NCBI RefSeq assembly: GCF_006345805.1 | Contig: NW_021824342.1 | Coordinates: forward strand, 1-19,091 | Length of the DNA stretch: 19,091 nucleotides | Direction of reading: 5' to 3' | From: Octopus sinensis | Taxonomy: Eukaryota | Shown here: piece after piece, positions 8,256-18,861 of the stretch | Position numbering within the stretch: position 1 is the stretch's first letter | Layout of the letters: every line of letters starts with the position of its first letter | Made by a program: the position numbers and the translations under genes | The notes under the pieces: generated by a model | Told to the model about the DNA's origin: nothing | The model's input: the letters and a program-made list of their open reading frames with translations, nothing else | Database searches by the model: none

Positions 8256-10271
8256 TGAAGAAAAAGCAAGCATGCATAAAACTTCATGTTCACGCCAGTT
8301 ACTGTATATCGAAAGTGAGAATAATTTAAATATATCACTTACACCTGAAATCTTTGTAGAAAACATTTCTATCGAAGTTCATTAAAGGAAAGCAAATATC
8401 AATCCTAATTGACAACATAATTTCCTCGCTTTATTCCCATTTGTTCCCAGCTGATATAAAACCACACATTTACACATAACCATGTTCACGCTTGGCCCCA
8501 AATCCCTCAGACACATATCTATGTCAACTGTGCGTCAATCTAGACACTCTTCACACATACTTCATTTCTCCCACGCATGTCAGGTGTATTATTATACTTT
8601 CTCTCTTCTCCACCGCAGAACACCCTTATTTCATTCTCACCTATTTCAGGATCGTAACATTATTTACAACTCTTCCCGCGACAACTGAGCTACAATCTAT
8701 CTATACATTAACTGTTGTCGGCACATATTATCTATTTCACTGACGACGAATCTTACCTTATTATAGATAAAACTGATGAGATGATTTTATTAATGCATCG
8801 ATAGCCGTTCAGCTCTCATACAGTGGCTATAAACTGAGAAAAATATTTCGTTTTGGGATTTGGTTTGCAAGATTCTTTATATGAGATCGTGTGTTGAAGC
8901 ATATTCTGTTGTGCCTGGGGAGAGACATTTTCTTTTTGCGCCTTATTATGTAACACACTCACCGGTAAAATTTCCACTTTTTTCTTATTTTTATTCTAAA
9001 ATTTTCGTTGCGTCTTGCAACCTTTTCAATAGTTTTGACTCACTGAGAAAAATATGTTTTTCTTTTAAGAAAGTGCTAATTTTAATATAAATACTTTAAA
9101 TTAGCATTATAGTGATCAGTGTATAAAGGCCTATTATAATTTCTAAGACTAAAATGCTTTTGTTGAGCAAGATGATTTAGTGGCAGGTTACGCCTGACTT
9201 TTTCAGCATTAGTCTTTATATGTGCCCGGGCATCTTTAGCAGCGGCACTAACTAGTTATACACATTTCAACAATCTCCGGTTGTTATTGTATTTCGTAAC
9301 TTTTCTTCTAAAGCCCAAGTGACAGTAAAAGGAAATCAGGAACATATTATTTAAACGTCAGATCAGATACAAATGTAAACATTTGCTGACAGCTTCTGAT
9401 TTTCAGTGAAAAGTCGTATTACCTAACTGCACTCATCTATTGAGAATTTAAGCCAAGTGGTTAACAACAAACGGCATGATAGTCTTCTGGCTTATTCACA
9501 AATAATCTTCCTTTGCTTGGTGGTCAATGTGCAAAAAAAAGAAATACAATTAAACTTTATACCCAGAATACTGGCAGTACAAAAAGAGGGGATTTGTTTC
9601 ATTGTACAACTTCCTTTGCATCTTAAACAAATCGCTTCTTCAGATATATCAATGGTGGACTCAAATGTTGTCTCAACAATTTTGAGTAATTCCGAAACTA
9701 TTAGTTACATAGATTCATGGGATTGTATAGTTGTATTATATATATATTACATGTACCTAAATATGAAACACGTCTAAATATTAAATACATCTAAATATTA
9801 AATGCGTATGAATATTAAATACATCTAAATTTACGCAAAAGCGAGAGAAGAATATATAAAGTGTCCGAGAACTATTCAATATGAATTAAAGGCGTTTGAT
9901 CTATGTAACGTAATGCAATAAAGTATTCCCCTGGCGATCCATTGTAGTTACGCATCCAATTGCACTTAGAACAGCCTATGCACAGATTTCAAATAACTAA
10001 ACTAGTGAAAAGTACGAAGGAAACAAATGATATACACACGGGATTATCTTAATTTCTCCTAGATTTGCTAAGTATATCATAAGCAGTTATACTATCAAGA
10101 ATAGTAGTAGCTTAACCACGATACTTGAAGTAGACTGGACTATCATAATCTAAGGGGAGTTCTGAACTAAACGGCAACAGTAGAACATTTAACTGTACAC
10201 ACACGATATGCTACCCGTGCATGTCTATGTATGAGTGTATAGATAGATAGCTATATATATATATATATATA

Positions 10272-10390
10272 TAGTAATGCATCGATATACGAGTTAATTT
10301 GTTCCCGGAGACCACTCGTAAAGCGAAAACGCGTAAACAGAGCAATAATTTTCCAAAGTAGCAATGTAATAAATCGTAATTCGTTCCAAG
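10272..10390 (+). mobile_element. Possible terminal fragment of a pogo/Tigger-like DNA transposon or MITE
   Basis: It starts in (TA)n with tagtaatgcatcgatatacgagttaatttgttcc, has an internal tacgagt/actcgta inverted pair (10288-10294/10314-10320) and a repeated taatt(t/c)gttcc motif. The resemblance to CAGT..CCTCG..ATACGAG termini is from memory, and no second terminus was found. Confidence 0.4.
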
Positions 10391-10446
10391 AAAAATATTT
10401 TGCCTATAGAATTTATAATTCTCGTACATAAATAACAATAAACAAC

Positions 10447-10495
10447 AGTAAAATATAAATATTTTAAGTAAAATATAAATATTTTAAGTAAAATA
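10447..10495. repeat. 20-bp tandem repeat x ~2.5
   Basis: agtaaaatataaatatttta occurs twice, plus a partial third unit. Confidence 0.9.
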
Positions 10496-10539
10496 AAAGA
10501 ATGTCAGGATCATTTATAATAAAAAATATTATTATTATT

Positions 10540-11028
10540 GTCATTTACTTTTAATCTGCATGTTAGATGCAATCACCTGCCGGGGCACACCCAGCGCCCT
10601 AGGGCAAGTGAAGGTTAAGAGTTGTTGAAATATAGCTGAAAGGTTGGGGAGGGGAAGTAGAGAAATCCTCCATGTAATACAACACAAACATTTAGATTGA
10701 TAGGGTTTTTCTAAGGATGTGGGCAGAGCAGTACTTGTTAGCTCAATCTTTTGGATTCCTTGAGACATGGTTCTCCAGGGATATTGTCTAGGTGTTTCTG
10801 ACATCCCTTTTTATCATACCTGGGGCACCTACAATAACAGGAACAGTTTTTGTTTAGATTCCACATCTTTTGTATTTCGATTTCCAGGTCCTATATTTAC
10901 TAAGTTTGTCAAATTCCTTTACAGATATATTTTATCAGTGGGGACGCTTACCTCTATTAGCTGCAGGTATTTTTCTTTCCTGTCTTTTAAACAATTATGT
11001 CTGGCGATTAGCCTTGATCGTTCTGTGA
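10540..11028 (-). mobile_element. 5'-truncated R4/Dong element of a second family (RLE domain + 3' UTR)
   Basis: The frame-corrected minus strand reads RTIKANR-DIIV-KDRKEKYLQLIEVSVPTD-NISVKEFDKLSKY-DLEIEIQKMWNL-TKTVPVIVGAPGMIK-GCQKHLDNIPGEPC-QGIQKIELTST-HILRKTLSI* (stop 10692-10694). The 3' UTR 10540-10691 is unlike that of the long copy. A short (TAA)4 tail is at 10527-10539. Amino-acid identity to the long copy's RLE is roughly 60% by hand alignment. Confidence 0.9.
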
Positions 11029-11058
11029 TTTTTTTTTTTTTTTTTTTGTTGACGAAAA

Positions 11059-11059
<1 letters not shown>

Positions 11060-11092
<33 letters not shown>

Positions 11093-11135
11093 TATTATTA
11101 TATTATTATATTATATTATTATTATTATTTTTATT
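11060..11135. repeat. (TAA)n tract at the 3' end of the long R4/Dong copy
   Basis: Interrupted (TAT)n run directly abutting the 3' UTR. Confidence 0.95.
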
Positions 11136-11232
11136 CAGTAGTTTATTTTTTATAGCGTGCTTTCACTTCACTACCGAGCGCAGCTCTGTGTGCCTTGGGT
11201 ATGTGCTGTGATTTGTTGTGATGCTCTGATGG

Positions 11233-14200
11233 TTATTGTATGGAAAGTGTTCTGCGTAGGATGTATGCAGTGCCTAGTAGTGCAATTTTCTGTATGTTAT
11301 ATGTGTTTGTAAGTCCTGGTTGTTTTGTTATGTATTTGTCTGAATATTTTTTATCATGCCTAATGCACCTACTATGATAGGAATTGTTTCTGTTTTCAGG
11401 TTCCACATTCTAGTTACCTCTATTTCCAGGTCTTGTGTATTTTGAGAGTTTCTACATTTCTTTTAGAGACACGTTGTCATCTGCCGGTATTGATACATCA
11501 ATTAGAAAGCATTTTTTTCTTCATGATCTCTGACAACTATATCTGGTCTGTTGGCCTTAATTTCTCTATCTGTGTGTATCGGCATATCCCAGAGTATGGT
11601 TGCTTTCTCGTTTCTGTGACCTTTTCTAGGGTGTGCCTATACCATCTTTTTTCAGTTGTTATTTCCATAATGTTGGCATAGCTTCCAATGTATGTAGGTT
11701 CCAACTCTGTCATGTCTGTGAATATATTCCTTCTTAGCCAGGACTGGGCAGCTAGAGATAATATGATTTATTGTTTTCTTGTCCATCTCCACATATTCTG
11801 CAGTACTTGTAATATTTCTTTCATTACATGTTTTGGTAATTTCTCGGCTGGGGGGTTTGGTCTTGTGCTGCAATTAAAAATCCCTCTGTTTCTGCTTTGA
11901 GTCCTGAGCTTCTCAACCATTGCTGGGATTTTCTTTGTCTATTTCTTTTGCGTTTAGTTTAGTGCAGTATTTACATGAAGGGGCTTTTTTTGCCATCGTT
12001 TTATCATGGCTCGTTGCTGTTCTATTTTTAGTTTGGATTTCATTTGTTTTATAGCTTTTGTTGTTTCTTCATCATCTTCTTCTTCTTCTTTGTGTTTATT
12101 AGGTGGTATGATTTCTTGTTTATTTGTCAGCTTCCTTAAATACCTGAGAACAGTTTTTGTTTTGCTCGTGTTTTGCTGCTATCTGGATCAGTTTTCCTTC
12201 CTTCTGAAGTAGGTATTTTTTGCAGACCTATGGTGGTTATTTTATAGTAGTTTTCCAGCTGTATAAGCCTCTACCACCTTCTATACGTTGTATATATAGT
12301 CTTTCTATGTCAGATTTTGGGTGATGCATCCTAGATCCTGTCAATATTTTTCTTGTTTTCCTATCTATTTTGGACAGTTCATTTCGTGTCCAGTTAAGGA
12401 TATTGGTAGCTGTAACTTATAACTGGGAGCTAAAGTGTTGATACCTATTATCTTGTTTTTAGCATTGAGCTCTGTTTTTAGTATTGATCTAACTCGTCTA
12501 TAATATTTTTTTTATTTTCTCTTTCATTTGGTGTGTTGTGTCTTATCTAGTTCATGGATTCCTAAGTATTTGTAAGTTTGGCTTTGGTCTAATTCTTTTA
12601 TTTCATTGGTTTTATCTAGTGTGATGTGTTACTCTTAACTAGTTTTCCTCTTTTCATGGTTACTTTGGCGCATTTTCTAATCCAAATTTCATATCTATTT
12701 CTTTGGTAAATCCATGAACTGTCTTTAATAGTGTTTCCAGCTGTTTGTCATTTGCAGCGTATAGTTTTAGGTCATCCATATATAAAAGGTGGCTGATCGT
12801 TTTGCCGTAACATTTATATCCGCATCCAGTTCTATTTAGCATATCAGATAGAGGTGACAGTGCCAAGCAGAAAAGGAGTGGAGAGAGCGTGTCTCCCTGG
12901 AATATCCTCTTCTAATGGGGATGTCTTTGGTTTTCATGAGTCCCTCTTTTGTTTGGAGCTGTAGCACTGTGTTGCCATTTATTCATAGAGTGCTCTATGA
13001 ATTTATGATTGTTGGTGCTACTTTGTTAAGGCTAGTGCTTCGAGGATCCATGTGTGGGGGATGCTATCAAACGCCTTTTGTAGTCAATCCAGGCCATACT
13101 GAGGCTTTCTTCTTTCTGTGGTGTCTTCAGTTACGGTTTATTAATCATTAGTTGATCTTTACAGCCATATGAGCCCTTGCGGCATCCTTTCTGCTCTTCT
13201 GGGAACAGTTGTTTTCGTCCAGGTGCTTGTTCAGCCTTTGCGATATCACTGCAGTAAATGCCTTGAACATAGTAGGGAGGCAGGTTATTGGTCTGTAGTT
13301 TTCTGGTTTTGTTGTTTCATTTGATTTGGGAATTAAGATGGTTTTCCTCTTCGTGAGCCATTCAGGCATTGTCTCTGGCTCTGCTAAAGTTTTCAGCCAG
13401 CTTTTTGTGCATTCCAGTTAGATATTTCAACCAGAAGTTGGGGATCTTGTCATGCCCAGGTGGCCTTCCAGTTGCTTAGTTTTGCAGTGCCTGGGTGACC
13501 TCTTCAGTTGTTATGTTGGGGGTCCAAAGTTGTTCAGATGCCGAGTTTGTTATTTTCATACTCCTTTTTTTGGCTGTTCGTTCGCCGACCATATTTCTTT
13601 CAGAATTCTTCCATTCTTCTGCCGTTGGTGCTGCAGTAACTTCTATTTTATTTTTGCCCAGTTCTTGGTAGAACTTTTGGGGTCGGAGTTGAACTTTTTG
13701 TTCTGTTCAAAGAAGCGTTGGCGTTTCTTTGTACCGGCGGATCCTGAGCTTTGGCAAGGATATCTTGCTTCAGCTTTTCTTTTATCTCCGGCAAATTTTT
13801 CTGTGATGTTATATTTGCGGAGCATTTTGTTCTTTTTTTATTGCTCAGTAGCGTTACTTGTTGCTGATTTCATTAAGAATCGACAGGTCCTTTTCTAATT
13901 TTTTTTATTTTGTTTTGGATGTTATTTATCCACAGGGTTTGTTGGGTGGTGGTACTCCTGTTTGGGGCGGGTTTGGGTGAGTATCCAGCTTCTTTTGTGG
14001 CTGCAGTGGCTGCTGCGTTATATCAAGTCATTTAGTTCAGTGATATCACTTTTTTTTGTTTCAGTGGCTAGTTCAGTGACGGCTAGGTTTATGTTGTTTA
14101 TAATTGGTGTTGTTATTGCGTTTATTTTGATTCTTGGGAGGTATGGTCGGTGGTCCATTTTGAGCTCTGTGGTTTTTAGTTCTTTGATTATTTTATTTTT

Positions 14201-14840
14201 TATATTATCATAAATCATTAGGCCCCCCTTCGTTGTTTACATCGTGTTTGTTGGGAATGTTGCGTTTGTCTTCGTGTTTTACAGTTTCAGTGTTTATATT
14301 ATTGGGCATTATTGTGTGGCTTCTATCTACATTTTCCTGGTGTATTTTTTCTTTTAAATGTTCTATTCTATTTCTGATATTTTTTTGGCTTTGAGAAGTA
14401 TCTTCGTACGTTAGCTAATTTATTAGGGTTCATTGCTGTATCCAAGTCTATATCTCTAGTATTTTTCCTTCCATATTTTATATGTATGTGTTGTTGATTT
14501 CATTTTGTGGGTAGAGCATTGCTGTGAAGTATGCGTGTAAGATAGAAATGTATTCCTCACGCGTCCATTTACGTCTTTTGGGTTTTAATTGGCGGGACAT
14601 GAGGTACAACGTCCGGCCCATTATTTTGACGGTCATCATTTTTGTAGGGTACCGGTCCGTTTATTTCTGTTGTCACATTATTTCGCACGTGTAGTTTTTC
14701 GTACATTTTTTGTTGTAGGTTTAATGTACGTACCGCTCGATTGTTATTCTTGGGTTGAATAGTATCGGTGGCATTATTTCTTCGTAGTTTCCTTTGTACA
14801 TGGTGTTTGAGGTCGGGGATGATCGTGTTGTTCCACGCAT
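11233..14840 (-). pseudogene. Frameshifted single ORF of the R4/Dong element (N-terminal domain, RT ~12555-13370, CCHC 11748-11802, RLE ~11233-11560)
   Basis: Track ORFs 14018-14218, 13643-13825, 13148-13369, 12660-12866 and 11652-11873 are in-register pieces of it. There are many 1-nt indels and at least one in-frame TAG (11452-11454). The start is uncertain; the ATG at 14838-14840 is a candidate only. Confidence 0.88.
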
Positions 14841-15051
14841 GTTTACATGTGTTGTGTTAGAGGTGGAGATAATATCGAGTCAAAATACATCATTTTTCGT
14901 TTCGAAAATAGTAATAAATTTCAATTCGTATTACTTACTCGGATATAGTCCAATTCTTTGTTAGTAAATCTTTGGCTCCATAGGGTGTCCTTGTTTTCGA
15001 GTTTTGTGGATAGATTTCGGAGCTCTGTATTTTCTTCTTACTCTTAAACGT

Positions 15052-15089
15052 CCCCGGTGTCTTCTCTTAACCCCGGTGTCTTCTCTTAA
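15052..15089. repeat. Perfect 2 x 19-bp tandem duplication at the 5' end of the R4/Dong copy
   Basis: ccccggtgtcttctcttaa at 15052-15070 and again at 15071-15089. Confidence 0.95.
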
Positions 15090-15092
15090 ACC

Positions 15093-15104
15093 TTATTATT
15101 ATTA

Positions 15105-15162
<58 letters not shown>
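15093..15162. repeat. (TAA)n tract at the 5' end of the long R4/Dong copy
   Basis: About 23 units of TTA with one interruption. Confidence 0.95.
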
Positions 15163-15164
<2 letters not shown>

Positions 15165-15295
15165 TATCGTTTCTGAATCACTTTCACTCGCACTACCCTT
15201 GCCTACACCATAACGATCGCGATCGCCGATTCACAAGCACCTGGAGACGGATTTGTTGATGTCTAGAGTTGTTTGCTTAGAAGGGTTTTTTTCGC
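15163..15295 (-). mobile_element. Probable 3' terminus of a third R4/Dong-related element (or a dependent SINE) ending in (TAA)n
   Basis: The minus strand reads aaaaaacccttctaagcaaacaactctagacatcaacaaatc...ggtagtgcgagtgaaag...tgaataataat. This parallels the long copy's end agaacactttccatacaataaccatcagagcatcacaacaaatc...ggtagtgaagtgaaag...tgaataa. There is no clear coding sequence upstream. Confidence 0.45.
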
Positions 15296-15399
15296 TCTCT
15301 ATAAATTTCTCGGTTACACATTAAAGCATTTAACATTTTTATAGTCATTATGAAATAAATCTTGTTTCATAATGCGGGTCCCCGTAAACTGAGATATTA

Positions 15400-15494
15400 C
15401 TGTATATGTATGTATGTATATATATATACATACACATATATGTATATATATATATATGTGTATATATATATATATTTCAATGTGTGTGTCTGTG

Positions 15495-15539
<45 letters not shown>
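15400..15539. repeat. Compound (AT)/(GT) microsatellite
   Basis: Directly visible. Confidence 0.93.
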
Positions 15540-15542
<3 letters not shown>

Positions 15543-15740
15543 GAAATTTACAGAAAACAAAGAAACACAAGGACGAAGATATGTGTAAAACAACCACAAG
15601 CAGGTGTATTAGTTTGGCGCTCGGGAAGATGAGGAAAATCTTTTACGTTTCGAACCTAGGCTCTACAGCAGAAAGAAACACAAGGAAATAATCAGAGTGA
15701 GGAATAAAAAACTTGTGGATTTAGCGGTCAATTAGGATAC

Positions 15741-15741
<1 letters not shown>
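15540..15741 (-). mobile_element. Same ~200-bp (AT)n-flanked repeat; copy 2
   Basis: The reverse complement is homologous to 7803-8006 (roughly three quarters identical by eye over the central ~110 nt). (AT)n tracts lie on both sides. Confidence 0.7.
15639..15676 (-). ncRNA. Second, more decayed hammerhead-like motif
   Basis: The reverse complement reads UCUUU-CUGCUGUA-GAGC(CUAG)GUUC-GAA-ACGU-A-AAAGA. The same three stems are kept (one G-U pair in stem II), but the core differs at positions 6 and 9. Confidence 0.45.
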
Positions 15742-15790
<49 letters not shown>

Positions 15791-16607
15791 AAACGGGCTC
15801 TTACAGTCGGCTTTTCGATGCCCCCATTGGCGGCGTTACACTTATCTGGCCTTTAAATAGCGTTTATAAATAAGACCGGCACCCATAGCCCTTGGTAACA
15901 AATTCTGAAATAGATTTAAGATATCTACATTAACCACTGCAAGGGAAATTACTCCGTAAGACAAACGGGGCTTGTTTTTTCACAGCGGGGGGTTTCCTTG
16001 TCAAGGTAGGCTTAGATGAACACACACACACACACATAAAACATAAAATATATATATATAATTTCTTTATTGTTTTTCTTTCTGCCACCCAACGTTATCA
16101 TGGCAGTAGCCACTGAAGCCGAACGATCAAACGCACACCGTACACAAAAATGTTTCTACCCCTACGCCAACACACACATATATAGAACAGTATACACAAC
16201 ACACACGTCTCTAAGTAGATTTTTTCTCGCCCCTTTATAAAACATCCAATATTCTTTAAATAGTCAGAACTTTATTCTCGGTCACAAAGAACATCTATAC
16301 ACCCCCACCAACATGTTTGACCGATGCCTGACCTGTTGAATTCTTCAGCCACCGGTTCTCAACATACACTGATAAACAGTTTCGCCATGGGCTCTTAGGG
16401 CACAGTTCGATTTGTTTTTTGCTCGCCTCTGTTCTGTTTTTGTTTTCCAACGGATTTCCTTTTTTCTTCCTGAAGAGAAAGACACAATATGGTCCCATTA
16501 TTCAATCGGATTTTGGTAATTTGTGCCTTTCGAAACACGTGTAGAATGAAATAAAACGATTTCTGTTCAATATGCGTTCAGCTCCATTTCTTCAATTCAC
16601 CAATAAT

Positions 16608-17000: not shown

Positions 17001-17071
17001 GCATGTATATATACATATGTACATATATGTAATGTAATATGCATATATTTATATATTATTTCTATTACTAA

Positions 17072-17079
17072 TATTATTA

Positions 17080-17116
<37 letters not shown>

Positions 17117-17138
17117 TTATTATTATTATTATTATTAT
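17072..17138. repeat. (TAA)n tract with no R4/Dong sequence attached
   Basis: Directly visible; the flanks are simple repeats and a SINE tail. Confidence 0.93.
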
Positions 17139-17183: not shown

Positions 17184-17334
17184 GGACTTGTTTTGGTTTC
17201 TGTCTATTAAATGCACTCACAAAGCTTTCGTCGGCCTAAGGCTATAGTAAGACGACTCTCGCTCAAGTTGCAGTGGGATTAAATCGGAAACCATGAGGCT
17301 GGGAAGCAAGCGTCTTACCCACAGCCACGCCTGC
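17184..17334 (-). mobile_element. tRNA-derived SINE, family B
   Basis: The reverse complement reads gcaggcgtggctgtgggtaagacgcttgcttcccagcctcatggtttccgatttaatcccactgc...ctatagccttaggccgacgaaagctttgtgagtg...agacagaaac. It has a tRNA-like head with decayed A/B boxes and runs into a (TACA/TA) simple-repeat tail. The family assignment is from recollection of octopus SINEs. Confidence 0.7.
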
Positions 17335-17590
17335 GAATATACTTTTTATAGAGAATTTGTAGAGATTACCTTAACAACCGATTTAATAGCACTGCTAACA
17401 CAGTAGAACACAGAATTTTCTTATAAAGCGCATAATATACTTTTTAATATATGATGGTTGCATAACGAAATACAGTGTCCCTATAAGTCATTAACAGCTT
17501 TTGCTTTCATTCCTGGTTGTGGTGGTAATATTCTAATCGTCTTAAACTACATACGAGTAACTTAGAAAATTACTATTTTTAAATCTCATA

Positions 17591-17938
17591 ATGAGAGATA
17601 TTCAGCAACAGTACTTTGGAGTAAAGTTTGTTTGCCAACATAACATGGCAGTCTTGGTTTAGGACTAATGTTGCTGTAATTTATCCCCCGGAGACATCGT
17701 CTCCAACTCACTATACGACACGATATGTGTCCTTATATTTTCGAACAGGGAAATCTTGTTTTCAGGCCGAGGGGATGTGCTAGATTCCCTTGTTCGAAAA
17801 TATAAGGGCACATATCGTGTCGTATAGCTGGCTGGAGACGATGTCTCCTGGGCCTAAATTACTGTAACATTCGTCCTAAACCAGGATTGCCATGTTATGT
17901 TGGCAAACAATCTGTACTCCGAGCAAAGTAACTCTCAT
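17591..17938. mobile_element. Foldback/MITE-like element made of long inverted arms
   Basis: 17618-17756 pairs with 17782-17920 at 122/139 identity by hand count, around a 25-nt spacer. The outer ends are atgagag (17591-17597) and ctctcat (17932-17938), with TA dinucleotides at or next to both ends. It has no coding capacity. Confidence 0.85.
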
Positions 17939-18397: not shown

Positions 18398-18585
18398 AAT
18401 ATTGATTTCAAATTTTGGAACAAATTCAGTAATTTCGGTTGGTGAGGGGATTATACGTCGATTACATCGACCCCAGTGCTCAACTGGTACTTATTTTGTT
18501 TTTATCATAAACTCATAACGTAAAGTCGGATAAAATACCGCTAAGCATTTTGCCCAGCGTACAAACGATTCTGCCATTTTGCCGC
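18398..18585 (-). mobile_element. tRNA-derived SINE related to family A, with a different 3' tail and an internal deletion
   Basis: The reverse complement reads gcggcaaaatggcagaatcgtttgtacgctgggcaaaatgcttagcggtatttt...aagtaccagttgagcactggggtcgatgtaatcgac...ccaaaattttgaaatcaatatt. It shares its head and the ctggggtcgatgtaatcgac block with copy 2. Confidence 0.8.
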
Positions 18586-18861
18586 TCTAAGGCGTTTTAT
18601 ATTATTACCACGAGAACCAAAAACGTAAGCTTCAAGCATCTGTTTTTGGAAATGTCGCTCGCAAAGTTTTAGAAAAATAACAAAGATAAACGTTTTCTTC
18701 AACTTCCATTTCGTATTTCAAAAAATTTTGAAAGGATGAATATATCAATAAAAAACTGGCCTAACTTGCGAGATTATAATCAGAAACGAACAACTTTGCG
18801 TACTGGAAATAGGAACCTTTCAGTTTTATAATGTATTAAAGAAGATTTTACACTTACAAAA

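What the first reader, a model, noticed from the sequence alone, without database searches (positions are those of the whole stretch)
10527..15295. Head-to-tail stack of two, probably three, different R4/Dong-type retrotransposons sharing one (TAA)n landing site
Seen: on the minus strand the order is [3' end #3]-(TAA)n-[full-length copy]-(TAA)n-[5'-truncated copy of another family]-(TAA)4, all in one orientation. The two coding copies are only ~60% identical in the RLE by hand and have unrelated 3' UTRs. Established: Dong elements of the R4 clade are RLE elements that target (TAA)n microsatellites. Inference: several distinct families share this target, and each insertion leaves a (TAA)n tail that is a fresh target. 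That would build self-extending multi-family arrays, analogous to telomeric retrotransposon arrays but interstitial. I do not know of a description of this in cephalopods, but cannot check.
Basis: partly seen in the sequence, partly recalled or inferred. Interest (0 to 1): 0.72.

Follow-up and report, generated by a model that had tools for sequence, protein, structure and literature searches.

The report
Two stacked (TAA)n-targeting Dong-type retrotransposons
Two dead copies of different lineages of a Dong/R4-type jumping gene sit head-to-tail in one (TAA)n microsatellite; this is the expected behaviour of a known TAA-targeting family, and the claimed third copy is not supported.

Summary
The core observation holds. 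On the minus strand the order is (TAA)23, copy A, an imperfect (TAA)~26, a 30-nt filler, copy B, then (TAA)4.

- **Copy A** is full length (about 3.96 kb) but dead.
- **Copy B** is 5'-truncated: the last ~110 codons plus a 3'UTR.
- **Different lineages:** A and B are 62% identical in protein and 74% in DNA. B is 76-79% identical to other database proteins.
- **Architecture:** both have the Dong/R4 layout, with a single ORF, a Myb-like N-terminus without zinc fingers, RT, CCHC and a PD..D..K restriction-like endonuclease.
- **The "third 3' end" (15163-15295) is not supported.** It has no coding similarity, no family 3'UTR hairpin and no stable fold.

(TAA)n targeting by Dong in insects, molluscs and cnidarians is published, and Dong-R4 is already annotated in octopus genomes. 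In unrelated loci I fetched, adjacent relatives were co-oriented 10 to 2, usually with (TAA)n between them, and were mutually divergent. One foreign locus holds a three-tier stack. Multi-lineage stacking therefore looks like a general by-product of strand-specific TAA targeting.

"Self-extending arrays" remains inference. I could not run an RT phylogeny against R4, Dong, HERO or NeSL. Interest is low to moderate. A covarying 3'UTR hairpin across the family is the most novel by-product.

The parts
15163..15295 (-). Unit '#3': sequence directly upstream of the first (TAA)n tract. Its origin is unknown. It is most likely plain flank and not a demonstrable LINE 3' end.
   Evidence: No tblastn hit to six full-length homologues and no endonuclease-tail motif in its three-frame translation. 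No hairpin-model hit at E<=10. MFE z-score +2.16. Only a 17-nt match to A's 3'UTR, reached by 13/500 shuffles.
15093..15162 (-). (TAA)23, the upstream part of the target microsatellite at A's 5' junction
   Evidence: TRF period 3, 23.7 copies, 97% matches; sequence read.
14802..15092 (-). Copy A 5'UTR (~291 nt). It begins GGTTTAAGAG and includes a perfect 2x19-nt direct repeat at 15052-15089.
   Evidence: family D20. The ORF alignment starts at 14781, with an ATG at about 14801.
11236..14801 (-). Copy A single-ORF remnant (~1180 codons). Myb-like W-x2-EEY...LANVRRY 14576..14398; RT 13366..12554 (YMDD at 12782..12759); CCHC knuckle 11802..11703; endonuclease RPD...LIDVS...KLSKY 11552..11437.
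   Evidence: Frameshift-aware alignment to P0007 residues 4-1220: 48% identity, 33-41 frameshifts, 4-7 stops. RVT_1 E 3.2e-33. The homologue's endonuclease motif aligns to the solved R2 endonuclease.
11136..11235 (-). Copy A 3'UTR, with a degenerate copy of the family hairpin at 11150-11213
   Evidence: Model R1 hit of 15.7 bits, E about 0.012, second best in the window and at the expected position. The MFE fold shows the residual outer stem.
11059..11135 (-). Imperfect (TAA)~26: A's tail and/or the residual target tract
   Evidence: TRF 27 copies, 87% matches, 10% indels.
11029..11058 (-). Filler at B's 5' junction: TTTTTCGTCAAC followed by A19
   Evidence: Read directly; A19 listed by TRF at 11029-11047. 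Origin unexplained.
10695..11028 (-). Copy B coding remnant, 5'-truncated inside the endonuclease domain (from ..HRTIKANRPDIIV to ..ILRKTLSI)
   Evidence: Alignment to the C-termini of P0037 (81/103), P0023 (78/104) and P0028 (79/104), against 65/104 to A.
10540..10694 (-). Copy B 3'UTR, with an intact two-stem family hairpin at 10556-10619
   Evidence: Model R1 hit of 55.4 bits, E 4.6e-16. The model was built only from foreign loci. The MFE fold reproduces the same two stems.
10527..10539 (-). (TAA)4 tail of B, followed by non-repeat flank
17049..17138 (-). A separate (TAA)~30 tract in the same orientation, with no Dong-like sequence next to it. It may be an unoccupied target. It is context and not part of the stack.
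   Evidence: TRF 30.3 copies, 85% matches. No tblastn or hairpin-model hit adjacent to it.

Best explanation
This is a small nest of two dead non-LTR retrotransposons of the (TAA)n-specific Dong/R4 type. They were most likely inserted one after the other into the same strand of one (TAA)n microsatellite by target-primed reverse transcription.

Proposed mechanism (inferred from R2 and Dong biology unless marked as shown):
1. The element protein carries an N-terminal Myb-like DNA-binding region, an RT, a CCHC knuckle and a C-terminal PD..D..K restriction-like endonuclease. This architecture is shown here.
2. The protein recognises the (TAA)n duplex strand-specifically and nicks the TTA strand.
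3. The (UAA)n 3' tail of the element RNA anneals to the nicked strand and primes cDNA synthesis.
4. A structured hairpin in the 3'UTR, about 25-45 nt upstream of the tail, is the likely RT-binding handle. The hairpin and its covariation are shown here. Its function is inferred.
5. Each insertion splits the tract. That leaves (TAA)n upstream of the new copy and a tail downstream, so later insertions of any TAA-specific lineage land in the same orientation.

The result is a co-oriented, mixed-lineage stack. Copy B aborted reverse transcription inside the endonuclease region, so it is 5'-truncated. Copy A was copied to its 5' end. Both have since decayed. The sequence upstream of the first tract (#3) is most likely ordinary flank.
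For: Window anatomy.
- The layout and the tracts are as described.
- A is full length and B is truncated.

Domain content.
- RVT_1 is present.
- The homologue's endonuclease motif aligns with the solved R2 endonuclease, KPD..VVDVTV..KVRKY. A carries the same motif.
- Among 14 full-length homologues there is no APE domain and no N-terminal zinc-finger hit.
- Homologues have a single ORF of about 1200 aa on contigs of about 4 kb.

Family-wide (TAA)n association.
- Of 19 C-terminally complete copies in metagenome loci with at least 100 nt of room, 15 have (TAA)n 70-270 nt after the stop.
- The same holds for all the ENA-locus copies mapped.
- 5'-truncated copies abut (TAA)n on their 5' side.

Stacking elsewhere.
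- Stacks occur in L001, L003/4, L028, L073, L075 and L077.
- Neighbours are co-oriented 10 to 2 (one-sided binomial p=0.019). Eight of the ten co-oriented pairs have (TAA)n between them, and neighbours are no more than 81% identical in DNA.

3'UTR hairpin.
- 92% of cells are paired, against 61% in shuffles and 29-45% when partners are slid.
- 11 of 15 pairs show compensatory changes.
- The model finds both A and B.

Literature.
- R4/Dong has RT plus an REL-endonuclease and a Myb-like N-terminus without zinc fingers (PMC7998251).
- Dong-R4 is abundant and recently active in Octopus vulgaris (PMC13282606).
Against: - No RT phylogeny against named R4, Dong, Rex6, HERO, NeSL or CRE references could be run. 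Some HERO families are also microsatellite-specific (PMC4640811).
- Rfam models detected no HDV-like 5' ribozyme, as reported for Dong and R4, at the 5' ends of A or of intact foreign copies.
- Pfam does not call the Myb-like region.
- B's upstream junction carries 30 nt of unexplained filler, and B's downstream tract has only 4 units. The precise target position and the order of events are therefore not established.
- One foreign full-length copy (L002) has no (TAA)n upstream.
- All population-level evidence comes from unidentified non-octopus host DNA in metagenome assemblies. The host genome of the window was not available.
Confidence: 0.75

Rival explanations
1. Single-event chimera. Reverse transcription began on B's RNA and aborted inside the endonuclease region. 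The RT then switched templates, first onto a polyadenylated RNA (giving TTTTTCGTCAAC plus A19) and then onto the (UAA)n tail of an A-lineage RNA. A and B were thus inserted together.
For: The unexplained 12 nt plus A19 filler sits exactly at B's 5' end. End-to-end template jumping is an established in vitro property of R2-type reverse transcriptases (my own knowledge, not checked here). Both copies look similarly decayed: roughly one frameshift per 55-95 nt (my own count from the alignments).
Against: The middle tract is long (about 26 units) and imperfect, like an independent microsatellite. In foreign loci the junction tracts between stacked copies are plain (TAA)5-21 without fillers, which fits sequential targeting. 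No direct evidence exists for either order.
Confidence: 0.12
2. Chance adjacency. The (TAA)n tracts are only the elements' own 3' tails. The elements insert in any AT-rich DNA, and A happened to land next to B.
For: Many terminal copies have only short downstream tracts of 3-7 units followed by unique sequence. L002 lacks an upstream tract.
Against: 5'-truncated copies in independent loci start within about 1-23 nt of an upstream (TAA)n. Tails cannot explain that. Neighbours are co-oriented 10 to 2, with (TAA)n at 8 of the 10 junctions. Published work documents (TAA)n targeting (PMC3812793, PMC7998251).
Confidence: 0.05
3. Same mechanism but a different clade. The elements belong to a microsatellite-specific HERO-like or other RLE lineage and not to R4/Dong.
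For: Some HERO families target microsatellites (PMC4640811). Hero copies of about 4.2 kb are also annotated in O. vulgaris (PMC13282606). No reference-based tree was run.
Against: Octopus Dong-R4 insertions outnumber Hero among recently active copies, 1129 to 13 (PMC13282606). The architecture (Myb-like N-terminus, no zinc finger) and the TAA target match the published R4/Dong description. A louse homologue family (P0109 cluster, 43% identity over the full query) comes from a species listed among R4/Dong-like elements in PMC7998251, although the accession could not be matched.
Confidence: 0.08

Closest known systems
Dong (Bombyx mori), DongAg (Anopheles), DongBg (Biomphalaria glabrata): (TAA)n-specific members of the R4 clade
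   Same: Single ORF with RT, CCHC and a restriction-like endonuclease. Myb-like N-terminus without zinc fingers. (TAA)n at both junctions and a (TAA)n 3' tail. A mollusc host is already documented (PMC3812793, PMC7998251).
   Different: Clade membership was not confirmed here by phylogeny. The HDV-like 5' ribozyme reported for Dong (PMC3774820) was not detected by Rfam models. The copies here are dead and belong to two diverged lineages.
R2 (28S rDNA-specific RLE LINE; solved structures 9nl2, 9nl3, 9dou, 8gh6)
   Same: Homologous RT, CCHC and endonuclease core (E 3e-31 to 3e-21). The endonuclease catalytic motif aligns. Mobilisation by TPRT with a structured 3'UTR handle.
   Different: R2 has N-terminal zinc finger(s) and targets one site in 28S rDNA. 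These elements target a microsatellite and lack the zinc finger.
Telomere-repeat-specific LINE arrays (TRAS/SART in Bombyx; HeT-A/TART/TAHRE in Drosophila)
   Same: Head-to-tail, co-oriented, multi-family stacks arise because the target is a strand-asymmetric simple repeat that each insertion regenerates (my own knowledge; TRAS is cited in PMC5035012).
   Different: Those elements use APE-type endonucleases or end-attachment, sit at chromosome ends and, in Drosophila, serve a host function. Here the stacks are interstitial and small (2-3 copies seen), with no sign of function.
Other repeat-targeting LINEs inserted in tandem (Utopia in U2 snRNA genes; Kibi/Koshi, Waldo/Mino and Togen in other microsatellites)
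   Same: Target-specific LINEs that pile up in their repeat target. Utopia-1_NVit is 'occasionally inserted in tandem' (PMC4640811).
   Different: Different clades and targets. In the papers I could search I found no explicit published description of mixed-lineage Dong stacks.

Membership tests
R4/Dong clade of RLE non-LTR retrotransposons | Non-LTR type reverse transcriptase domain | tested here: met
   RVT_1 E 3.2e-33 on A's conceptual translation. Found in 14/14 full-length homologues.
R4/Dong clade of RLE non-LTR retrotransposons | C-terminal CCHC motif followed by a PD..(D/E)xK restriction-like endonuclease, and no APE endonuclease | tested here: met
   A carries CRICGDGQE..H..C, RPDIVV, LIDVS and K.SKY. 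The homologue's motif aligns with the R2 endonuclease in 9nl3_A. No Exo_endo_phos hit in 14 homologues.
R4/Dong clade of RLE non-LTR retrotransposons | Single ORF in an element of about 4-5 kb | tested here: met
   Homologues of about 1170-1250 aa on contigs of about 3.8-4.5 kb. A spans 3957 bp between the tracts.
R4/Dong clade of RLE non-LTR retrotransposons | N-terminal divergent Myb/SANT-like domain without zinc fingers (PMC7998251) | tested here: inconclusive
   A conserved W-x2-EEY ... W ... NKLAN-RR block is present in A and in all homologues. Pfam gives no Myb hit and no zinc-finger hit. No profile-profile or structure test was run.
R4/Dong clade of RLE non-LTR retrotransposons | Dong subgroup: insertion into (TAA)n with a (TAA)n 3' tail | tested here: met
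   In the window, (TAA)n flanks A on both sides. B has (TAA)~26 plus the filler upstream and (TAA)4 downstream. In foreign loci 15/19 copies have tails, and truncated copies abut an upstream (TAA)n.
R4/Dong clade of RLE non-LTR retrotransposons | RT phylogeny groups with R4, Dong and Rex6 and not with R2, NeSL, HERO or CRE | not testable with these tools
   No named reference sequences of these clades were reachable. Only R2 chains from the PDB were available. Supplements searched held none.
R4/Dong clade of RLE non-LTR retrotransposons | HDV-like self-cleaving ribozyme at the 5' end (shown for Dong and R4, PMC3774820) | tested here: inconclusive
   No HDV-like Rfam hit at E<=10 in window 10000-16000, nor at E<=1 in L001, L002, L004 or L005. 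No Rfam family matched either way, and copy A is decayed. No dedicated descriptor search was run.
HERO clade (some microsatellite-specific families) | RT phylogeny within HERO | not testable with these tools
   No HERO reference sequence was available. This family was considered only because PMC4640811 notes microsatellite-specific HERO families.
R2 clade | N-terminal C2H2 zinc finger(s) plus Myb, and a 28S rDNA target | tested here: not met
   No zinc-finger hit in 14 homologues. The flanks are (TAA)n and not rDNA. The alignment to R2 begins only at about residue 357.

The most novel reading that the evidence does not exclude
(TAA)n-specific Dong-type lineages may routinely build co-oriented, mixed-lineage stacks across animal phyla, because every insertion regenerates an oriented (TAA)n landing pad. 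Several lineages may coexist on this one niche because each carries its own covarying version of a conserved two-stem 3'UTR hairpin, which lets each RT recognise its own RNA. If 5' ribozymes are present, read-through transcription of a stack could release several element RNAs from one transcript.
Probability: 0.3. Interest if true: 0.5.

Novelty: new member of a known kind. Interest (0 to 1): 0.27.

Why it matters
For annotation, this locus should be read as two decayed Dong-R4 copies of different lineages nested in a TAA microsatellite. It is not a gene or a novel element class.

More broadly, it illustrates how strand-specific microsatellite targeting produces oriented multi-lineage stacks. 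Such targeting keeps insertions out of genes and may help explain the high copy number of Dong-R4 in octopus genomes.

The covarying 3'UTR hairpin gives a compact, testable candidate for the RNA handle that these reverse transcriptases recognise. It could also serve as a sensitive marker for very short 3'-end fragments that protein searches miss.

Tried and rejected
- **HDV-like 5' ribozyme.** Rfam searches of the window and of four foreign loci gave no hit. All window hits were TA-microsatellite "miRNA" artefacts.
- **Unit #3 as a third element.** Rejected as unproven.
- **Stack inside an older TIR/MITE.** The two outer flanks show no direct or inverted similarity beyond chance.
- **Identifying the source genome.** An exact look-up of a window ORF found nothing on record. 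Loci fetched through B-like proteins are only about 71% identical in DNA and share no other repeats with the window, so they are not the same species.
- **Reference sequences or accessions for an R4/Dong/HERO tree.** None were held in the paper supplements searched. The Dong (1993) paper and the Biedler et al. (2015) R4-clade paper were not held.
- **5' junctions in metagenome contigs.** Most contigs end inside the 5'UTR, so they say little about 5' junctions of full-length copies.
- **Published description of Dong stacks.** Six literature searches found none. This is absence of evidence within the held library only.


Full report
**What is in the window.** Read on the minus strand, the region contains three co-oriented (TAA)n tracts:
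- 15162..15093: 23.7 units, 97% matches.
- 11135..11059: 27 units, 87% matches, 10% indels.
- 10539..10527: 4 units.

A fourth tract in the same orientation lies 1.9 kb upstream at 17138..17049. No retrotransposon sequence lies next to it.

**Copy A.** The 3957 bp between the first two tracts encode a decayed single ORF.
- A stitched translation of the RT region matches Pfam RVT_1 at E 3.2e-33.
- A search of the large protein collection with the stitched RT-to-C-terminus translation gave over 1500 hits. The best are about 1170-1250-aa single-ORF proteins on contigs of about 4 kb, at up to 50% identity.
- I wrote a frameshift-aware protein-to-DNA aligner. With it, P0007 residues 4-1220 align to window 14781..11239 at 48% identity. 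Depending on the penalty, the alignment needs 33-41 frameshifts and has 4-7 in-frame stops.
- A is therefore full length but long dead.

Landmarks of A:

| Feature | Window coordinates |
|---|---|
| Conserved N-terminal W-x2-EEY...NKLANVRRY block | 14576..14398 |
| RT (YMDD at 12782) | 13366..12554 |
| CCHC knuckle | 11802..11703 |
| Endonuclease motif RPDIVV...LIDVS...KLSKY | 11552..11437 |
| 5'UTR (starts directly after (TAA)23) | 15092..14802 |
| 3'UTR | 11235..11136 |

The 5'UTR contains a perfect 2x19-nt direct repeat.

**Copy B.** After the middle tract come 30 nt of filler (TTTTTCGTCAAC plus A19, 11058..11029). Then comes a 5'-truncated copy.
- 11028..10695 encodes the last ~110 residues (..HRTIKANRPDIIV to ILRKTLSI).
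- This is followed by a ~150-nt 3'UTR and (TAA)4.
- B is 76-79% identical to P0037, P0023 and P0028, but only 65/104 (62%) identical to A's own C-terminus. A and B are 74% identical in DNA over 313 aligned bases.
- Their 3'UTRs have no significant primary-sequence similarity.

**Unit #3 (15295..15163).** This is not supported as a third element.
- It gave no hit to six full-length homologues in tblastn over the whole window, and its three-frame translation shows no endonuclease-tail motif.
- Its only similarity to A's 3'UTR is a 17-nt match that 13 of 500 shuffles reach.
- It gave no hit to the family 3'UTR hairpin model described below, even at E<=10 with filters off.
- It folds less stably than its own shuffles (z +2.16), whereas B's 3'UTR folds into the family hairpin.
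- Some lineages lack that hairpin, so a tiny 3' fragment of another lineage cannot be excluded. I put this at about 0.25.

**What family.** The architecture matches the published description of R4/Dong (PMC7998251): a single ORF, no APE domain, RT, CCHC, a C-terminal PD..D..K endonuclease, and a Myb-like N-terminus without zinc fingers.
- The full-length homologue P0007 aligns to solved R2 proteins at E 3e-31 to 3e-21. Its RPD / IDMS / K.SKY motif falls on the R2 endonuclease motif KPD / VDVT / K.RKY. Copy A carries the same motif.
- Among 14 full-length homologues, Pfam finds RVT_1 and a sub-threshold zf-RVT in all 14. It finds no Exo_endo_phos and no N-terminal zinc finger.
- Octopus genomes are annotated with abundant, recently active Dong-R4 LINEs: 5 families and 1129 near-intact insertions in O. 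vulgaris, against 13 for Hero (PMC13282606; also PMC8967140).
- One named homologue family is a 10-member "reverse transcriptase, putative" cluster in Pediculus humanus corporis. That species is listed among R4/Dong-like elements in PMC7998251, but I could not match accessions.
- I could not run the RT phylogeny, because no named R4, Dong, Rex6, NeSL or HERO sequences were reachable. This matters because some HERO families are also microsatellite-specific (PMC4640811).
- I therefore call the elements "Dong/R4-type" at about 0.85-0.9, not proven.

**Is the TAA association and the stacking more than chance?** The source genome was not available, so I fetched loci encoding relatives from public assemblies. 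They are not the same species as the window. DNA identity to B is about 71%, and no other repeats are shared.
- *3' ends.* In metagenome contigs, 15 of the 19 C-terminally complete copies with at least 100 nt of room have (TAA)n 70-270 nt after the stop. All copies in the longer ENA loci do too.
- *5' ends.* 5'-truncated copies begin within about 1-23 nt of an upstream (TAA)n in L001, L028, L053, L061, L073, L075, L077 and L087. A 3' tail cannot explain this. It is the signature of insertion into the tract.
- *Full-length copies.* L001 (two copies), L003/4 and L005 have (TAA)n or a degenerate TAA tract directly upstream. L002 does not.
- *Adjacency.* 8 of about 22 independent loci with usable flanks (my own tally from the maps) have a second Dong-like copy within about 1.2 kb.
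- *Orientation.* Neighbour pairs are co-oriented 10 to 2 (one-sided binomial p=0.019). Eight of the ten co-oriented pairs have (TAA)n at the junction. Neighbours are no more than 81% identical in DNA or undetectable by blastn, so they belong to different lineages.
- *Three tiers.* L075 holds (TAA)9, a ~0.7-kb 3' fragment, (TAA)5, a ~0.4-kb fragment, (TAA)7 and a copy of at least 2.9 kb.

Mixed-lineage, co-oriented stacks joined by (TAA)n are thus a recurrent property of this family. They are not peculiar to this window.

**A conserved 3'UTR hairpin.** Right-aligning the 3'UTRs showed a shared motif, CC(C/U)(U/A)AGG ... C(C/U)(C/G)GG ... AUUGUA.
- An alignment of 11 foreign sequences gives a two-stem hairpin: a 9-bp outer stem, a 3-nt internal loop and a 6-bp inner stem.
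- 92% of cells are paired, against 61% in column shuffles and 29-45% when partners are slid by 1-3 columns.
- 11 of 15 pairs show compensatory double changes.
- A covariance model built only from these foreign sequences hits B's 3'UTR at 55.4 bits (E 4.6e-16). It hits A's 3'UTR at 15.7 bits (E about 0.012), which is the second-best hit in the window and lies at the expected place.
- In the foreign loci the model also finds extra 3'-end fragments just upstream of (TAA)n tracts.
- By analogy with R2, this is the likely RT-binding handle. The stems differ between lineages while the junction nucleotides are fixed. That is compatible with lineage-specific recognition (inference).

**Mechanism and order of events.** The best reading is sequential target-primed reverse transcription into one strand-defined (TAA)n tract. 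B aborted inside the endonuclease region, and A was copied to its 5' end.
- Which copy came first cannot be read from this locus. Both are heavily decayed.
- The upstream tract is purer (97%) than the middle one (87%), but slippage makes purity a poor clock.
- The 12 nt plus A19 filler at B's 5' junction is unexplained. It keeps alive a single-event template-switch chimera as a rival (about 0.12).
- "Self-extending arrays" is plausible. Junction tracts between stacked copies can be as short as typical tails (5-7 units), so a tail may suffice as a target. It is not demonstrated, and no stack larger than three was seen.

**Ribozyme.** Dong and R4 have an HDV-like self-cleaving ribozyme at the 5' end (PMC3774820). 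In a stack, this would allow read-through transcripts to be processed into unit RNAs. Rfam gave no HDV-like hit in A or in intact foreign copies. No dedicated descriptor search was run, so this is inconclusive.

**Verdict.** TAA-specific Dong/R4-type LINEs are already documented in molluscs and annotated in octopus. Stacking is the expected consequence of strand-specific repeat targeting, as seen for other repeat-targeting LINEs. In six literature searches I found no explicit published description of mixed-lineage Dong stacks or of the 3'UTR hairpin. These are modest additions and not a new category.

Noticed in passing
window 10556-10619 and 11150-11213 (minus strand); L001 9714-9777, L003 7829-7896, L005 7840-7903, L008, L009, L012, L019, L021, L028, L075 (two sites), L002: A conserved two-stem hairpin lies in the 3'UTR about 25-45 nt upstream of the (TAA)n tail. 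92% of cells are paired and 11/15 pairs show compensatory changes. The junction nucleotides are fixed and the stems are lineage-specific. About half of the 3'UTRs examined lack the motif, so other lineages may use another structure.
   Followed up: yes
window 11029-11058: A 30-nt filler (TTTTTCGTCAAC plus A19) lies between the middle (TAA)n tract and the truncated 5' end of copy B. It could be non-templated or template-switch material, or the remnant of a minute poly(A)-tailed insertion.
   Followed up: no
window 15052-15089: A perfect 2x19-nt tandem duplication (CCCCGGTGTCTTCTCTTAA on the plus strand) sits at the very 5' end of the otherwise heavily decayed copy A. Perfect identity suggests a recent slippage event.
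   Followed up: no
window 11236-14801: Copy A needs 33-41 frameshifts but has only 4-7 in-frame stops. This indel-heavy decay could reflect indel-biased mutation, or homopolymer errors in a long-read assembly.
   Followed up: no
window 17049-17138: A (TAA)~30 tract lies in the same orientation as the stack but with no Dong-like coding or hairpin signal next to it. It may be an unoccupied target. A SINE-like sequence lies just upstream on the minus strand.
   Followed up: partly
window 17618-17920: A large inverted repeat: 139-nt arms, 88% complementary, 25-nt spacer. It looks like a foldback or MITE-like element.
   Followed up: partly
window ~17200-17345 and ~18430-18600 (minus strand): From memory only, these look like tRNA-derived SINE copies of the kind abundant in octopus genomes (e.g. 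...cactggggtcgatgtaatcgac...). This fits a cephalopod source but was not verified with any tool.
   Followed up: no
window 10447-10495: A perfect 2.5-copy tandem repeat of a 20-nt unit (AGTAAAATATAAATATTTTA) lies in the flank just downstream of the stack.
   Followed up: no
L075 5133-9246; L001 3639-14161: Foreign stacks. L075 holds (TAA)9, a 3' fragment, (TAA)5, a fragment, (TAA)7 and a long truncated copy. L001 holds (TAA)19, a truncated copy, (TAA)6 and a full-length intact copy, followed about 550 nt later by (TAA)21 and a further near-full-length copy. All are co-oriented and of different lineages.
   Followed up: yes
window 15397-15540 and 10212-10290: The Rfam 'miRNA' hits (mir-297, mir-1277 and others, all far below gathering scores) fall on (TA)n/(TG)n microsatellites and are low-complexity artefacts.
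   Followed up: yes
L025 3094-3122: In this foreign locus a C-terminally complete copy is followed, about 96 nt after its end, by a (TTA)9 tract, the opposite strand of the usual tail. This is an exception to the strand rule and is unexplained.
   Followed up: no
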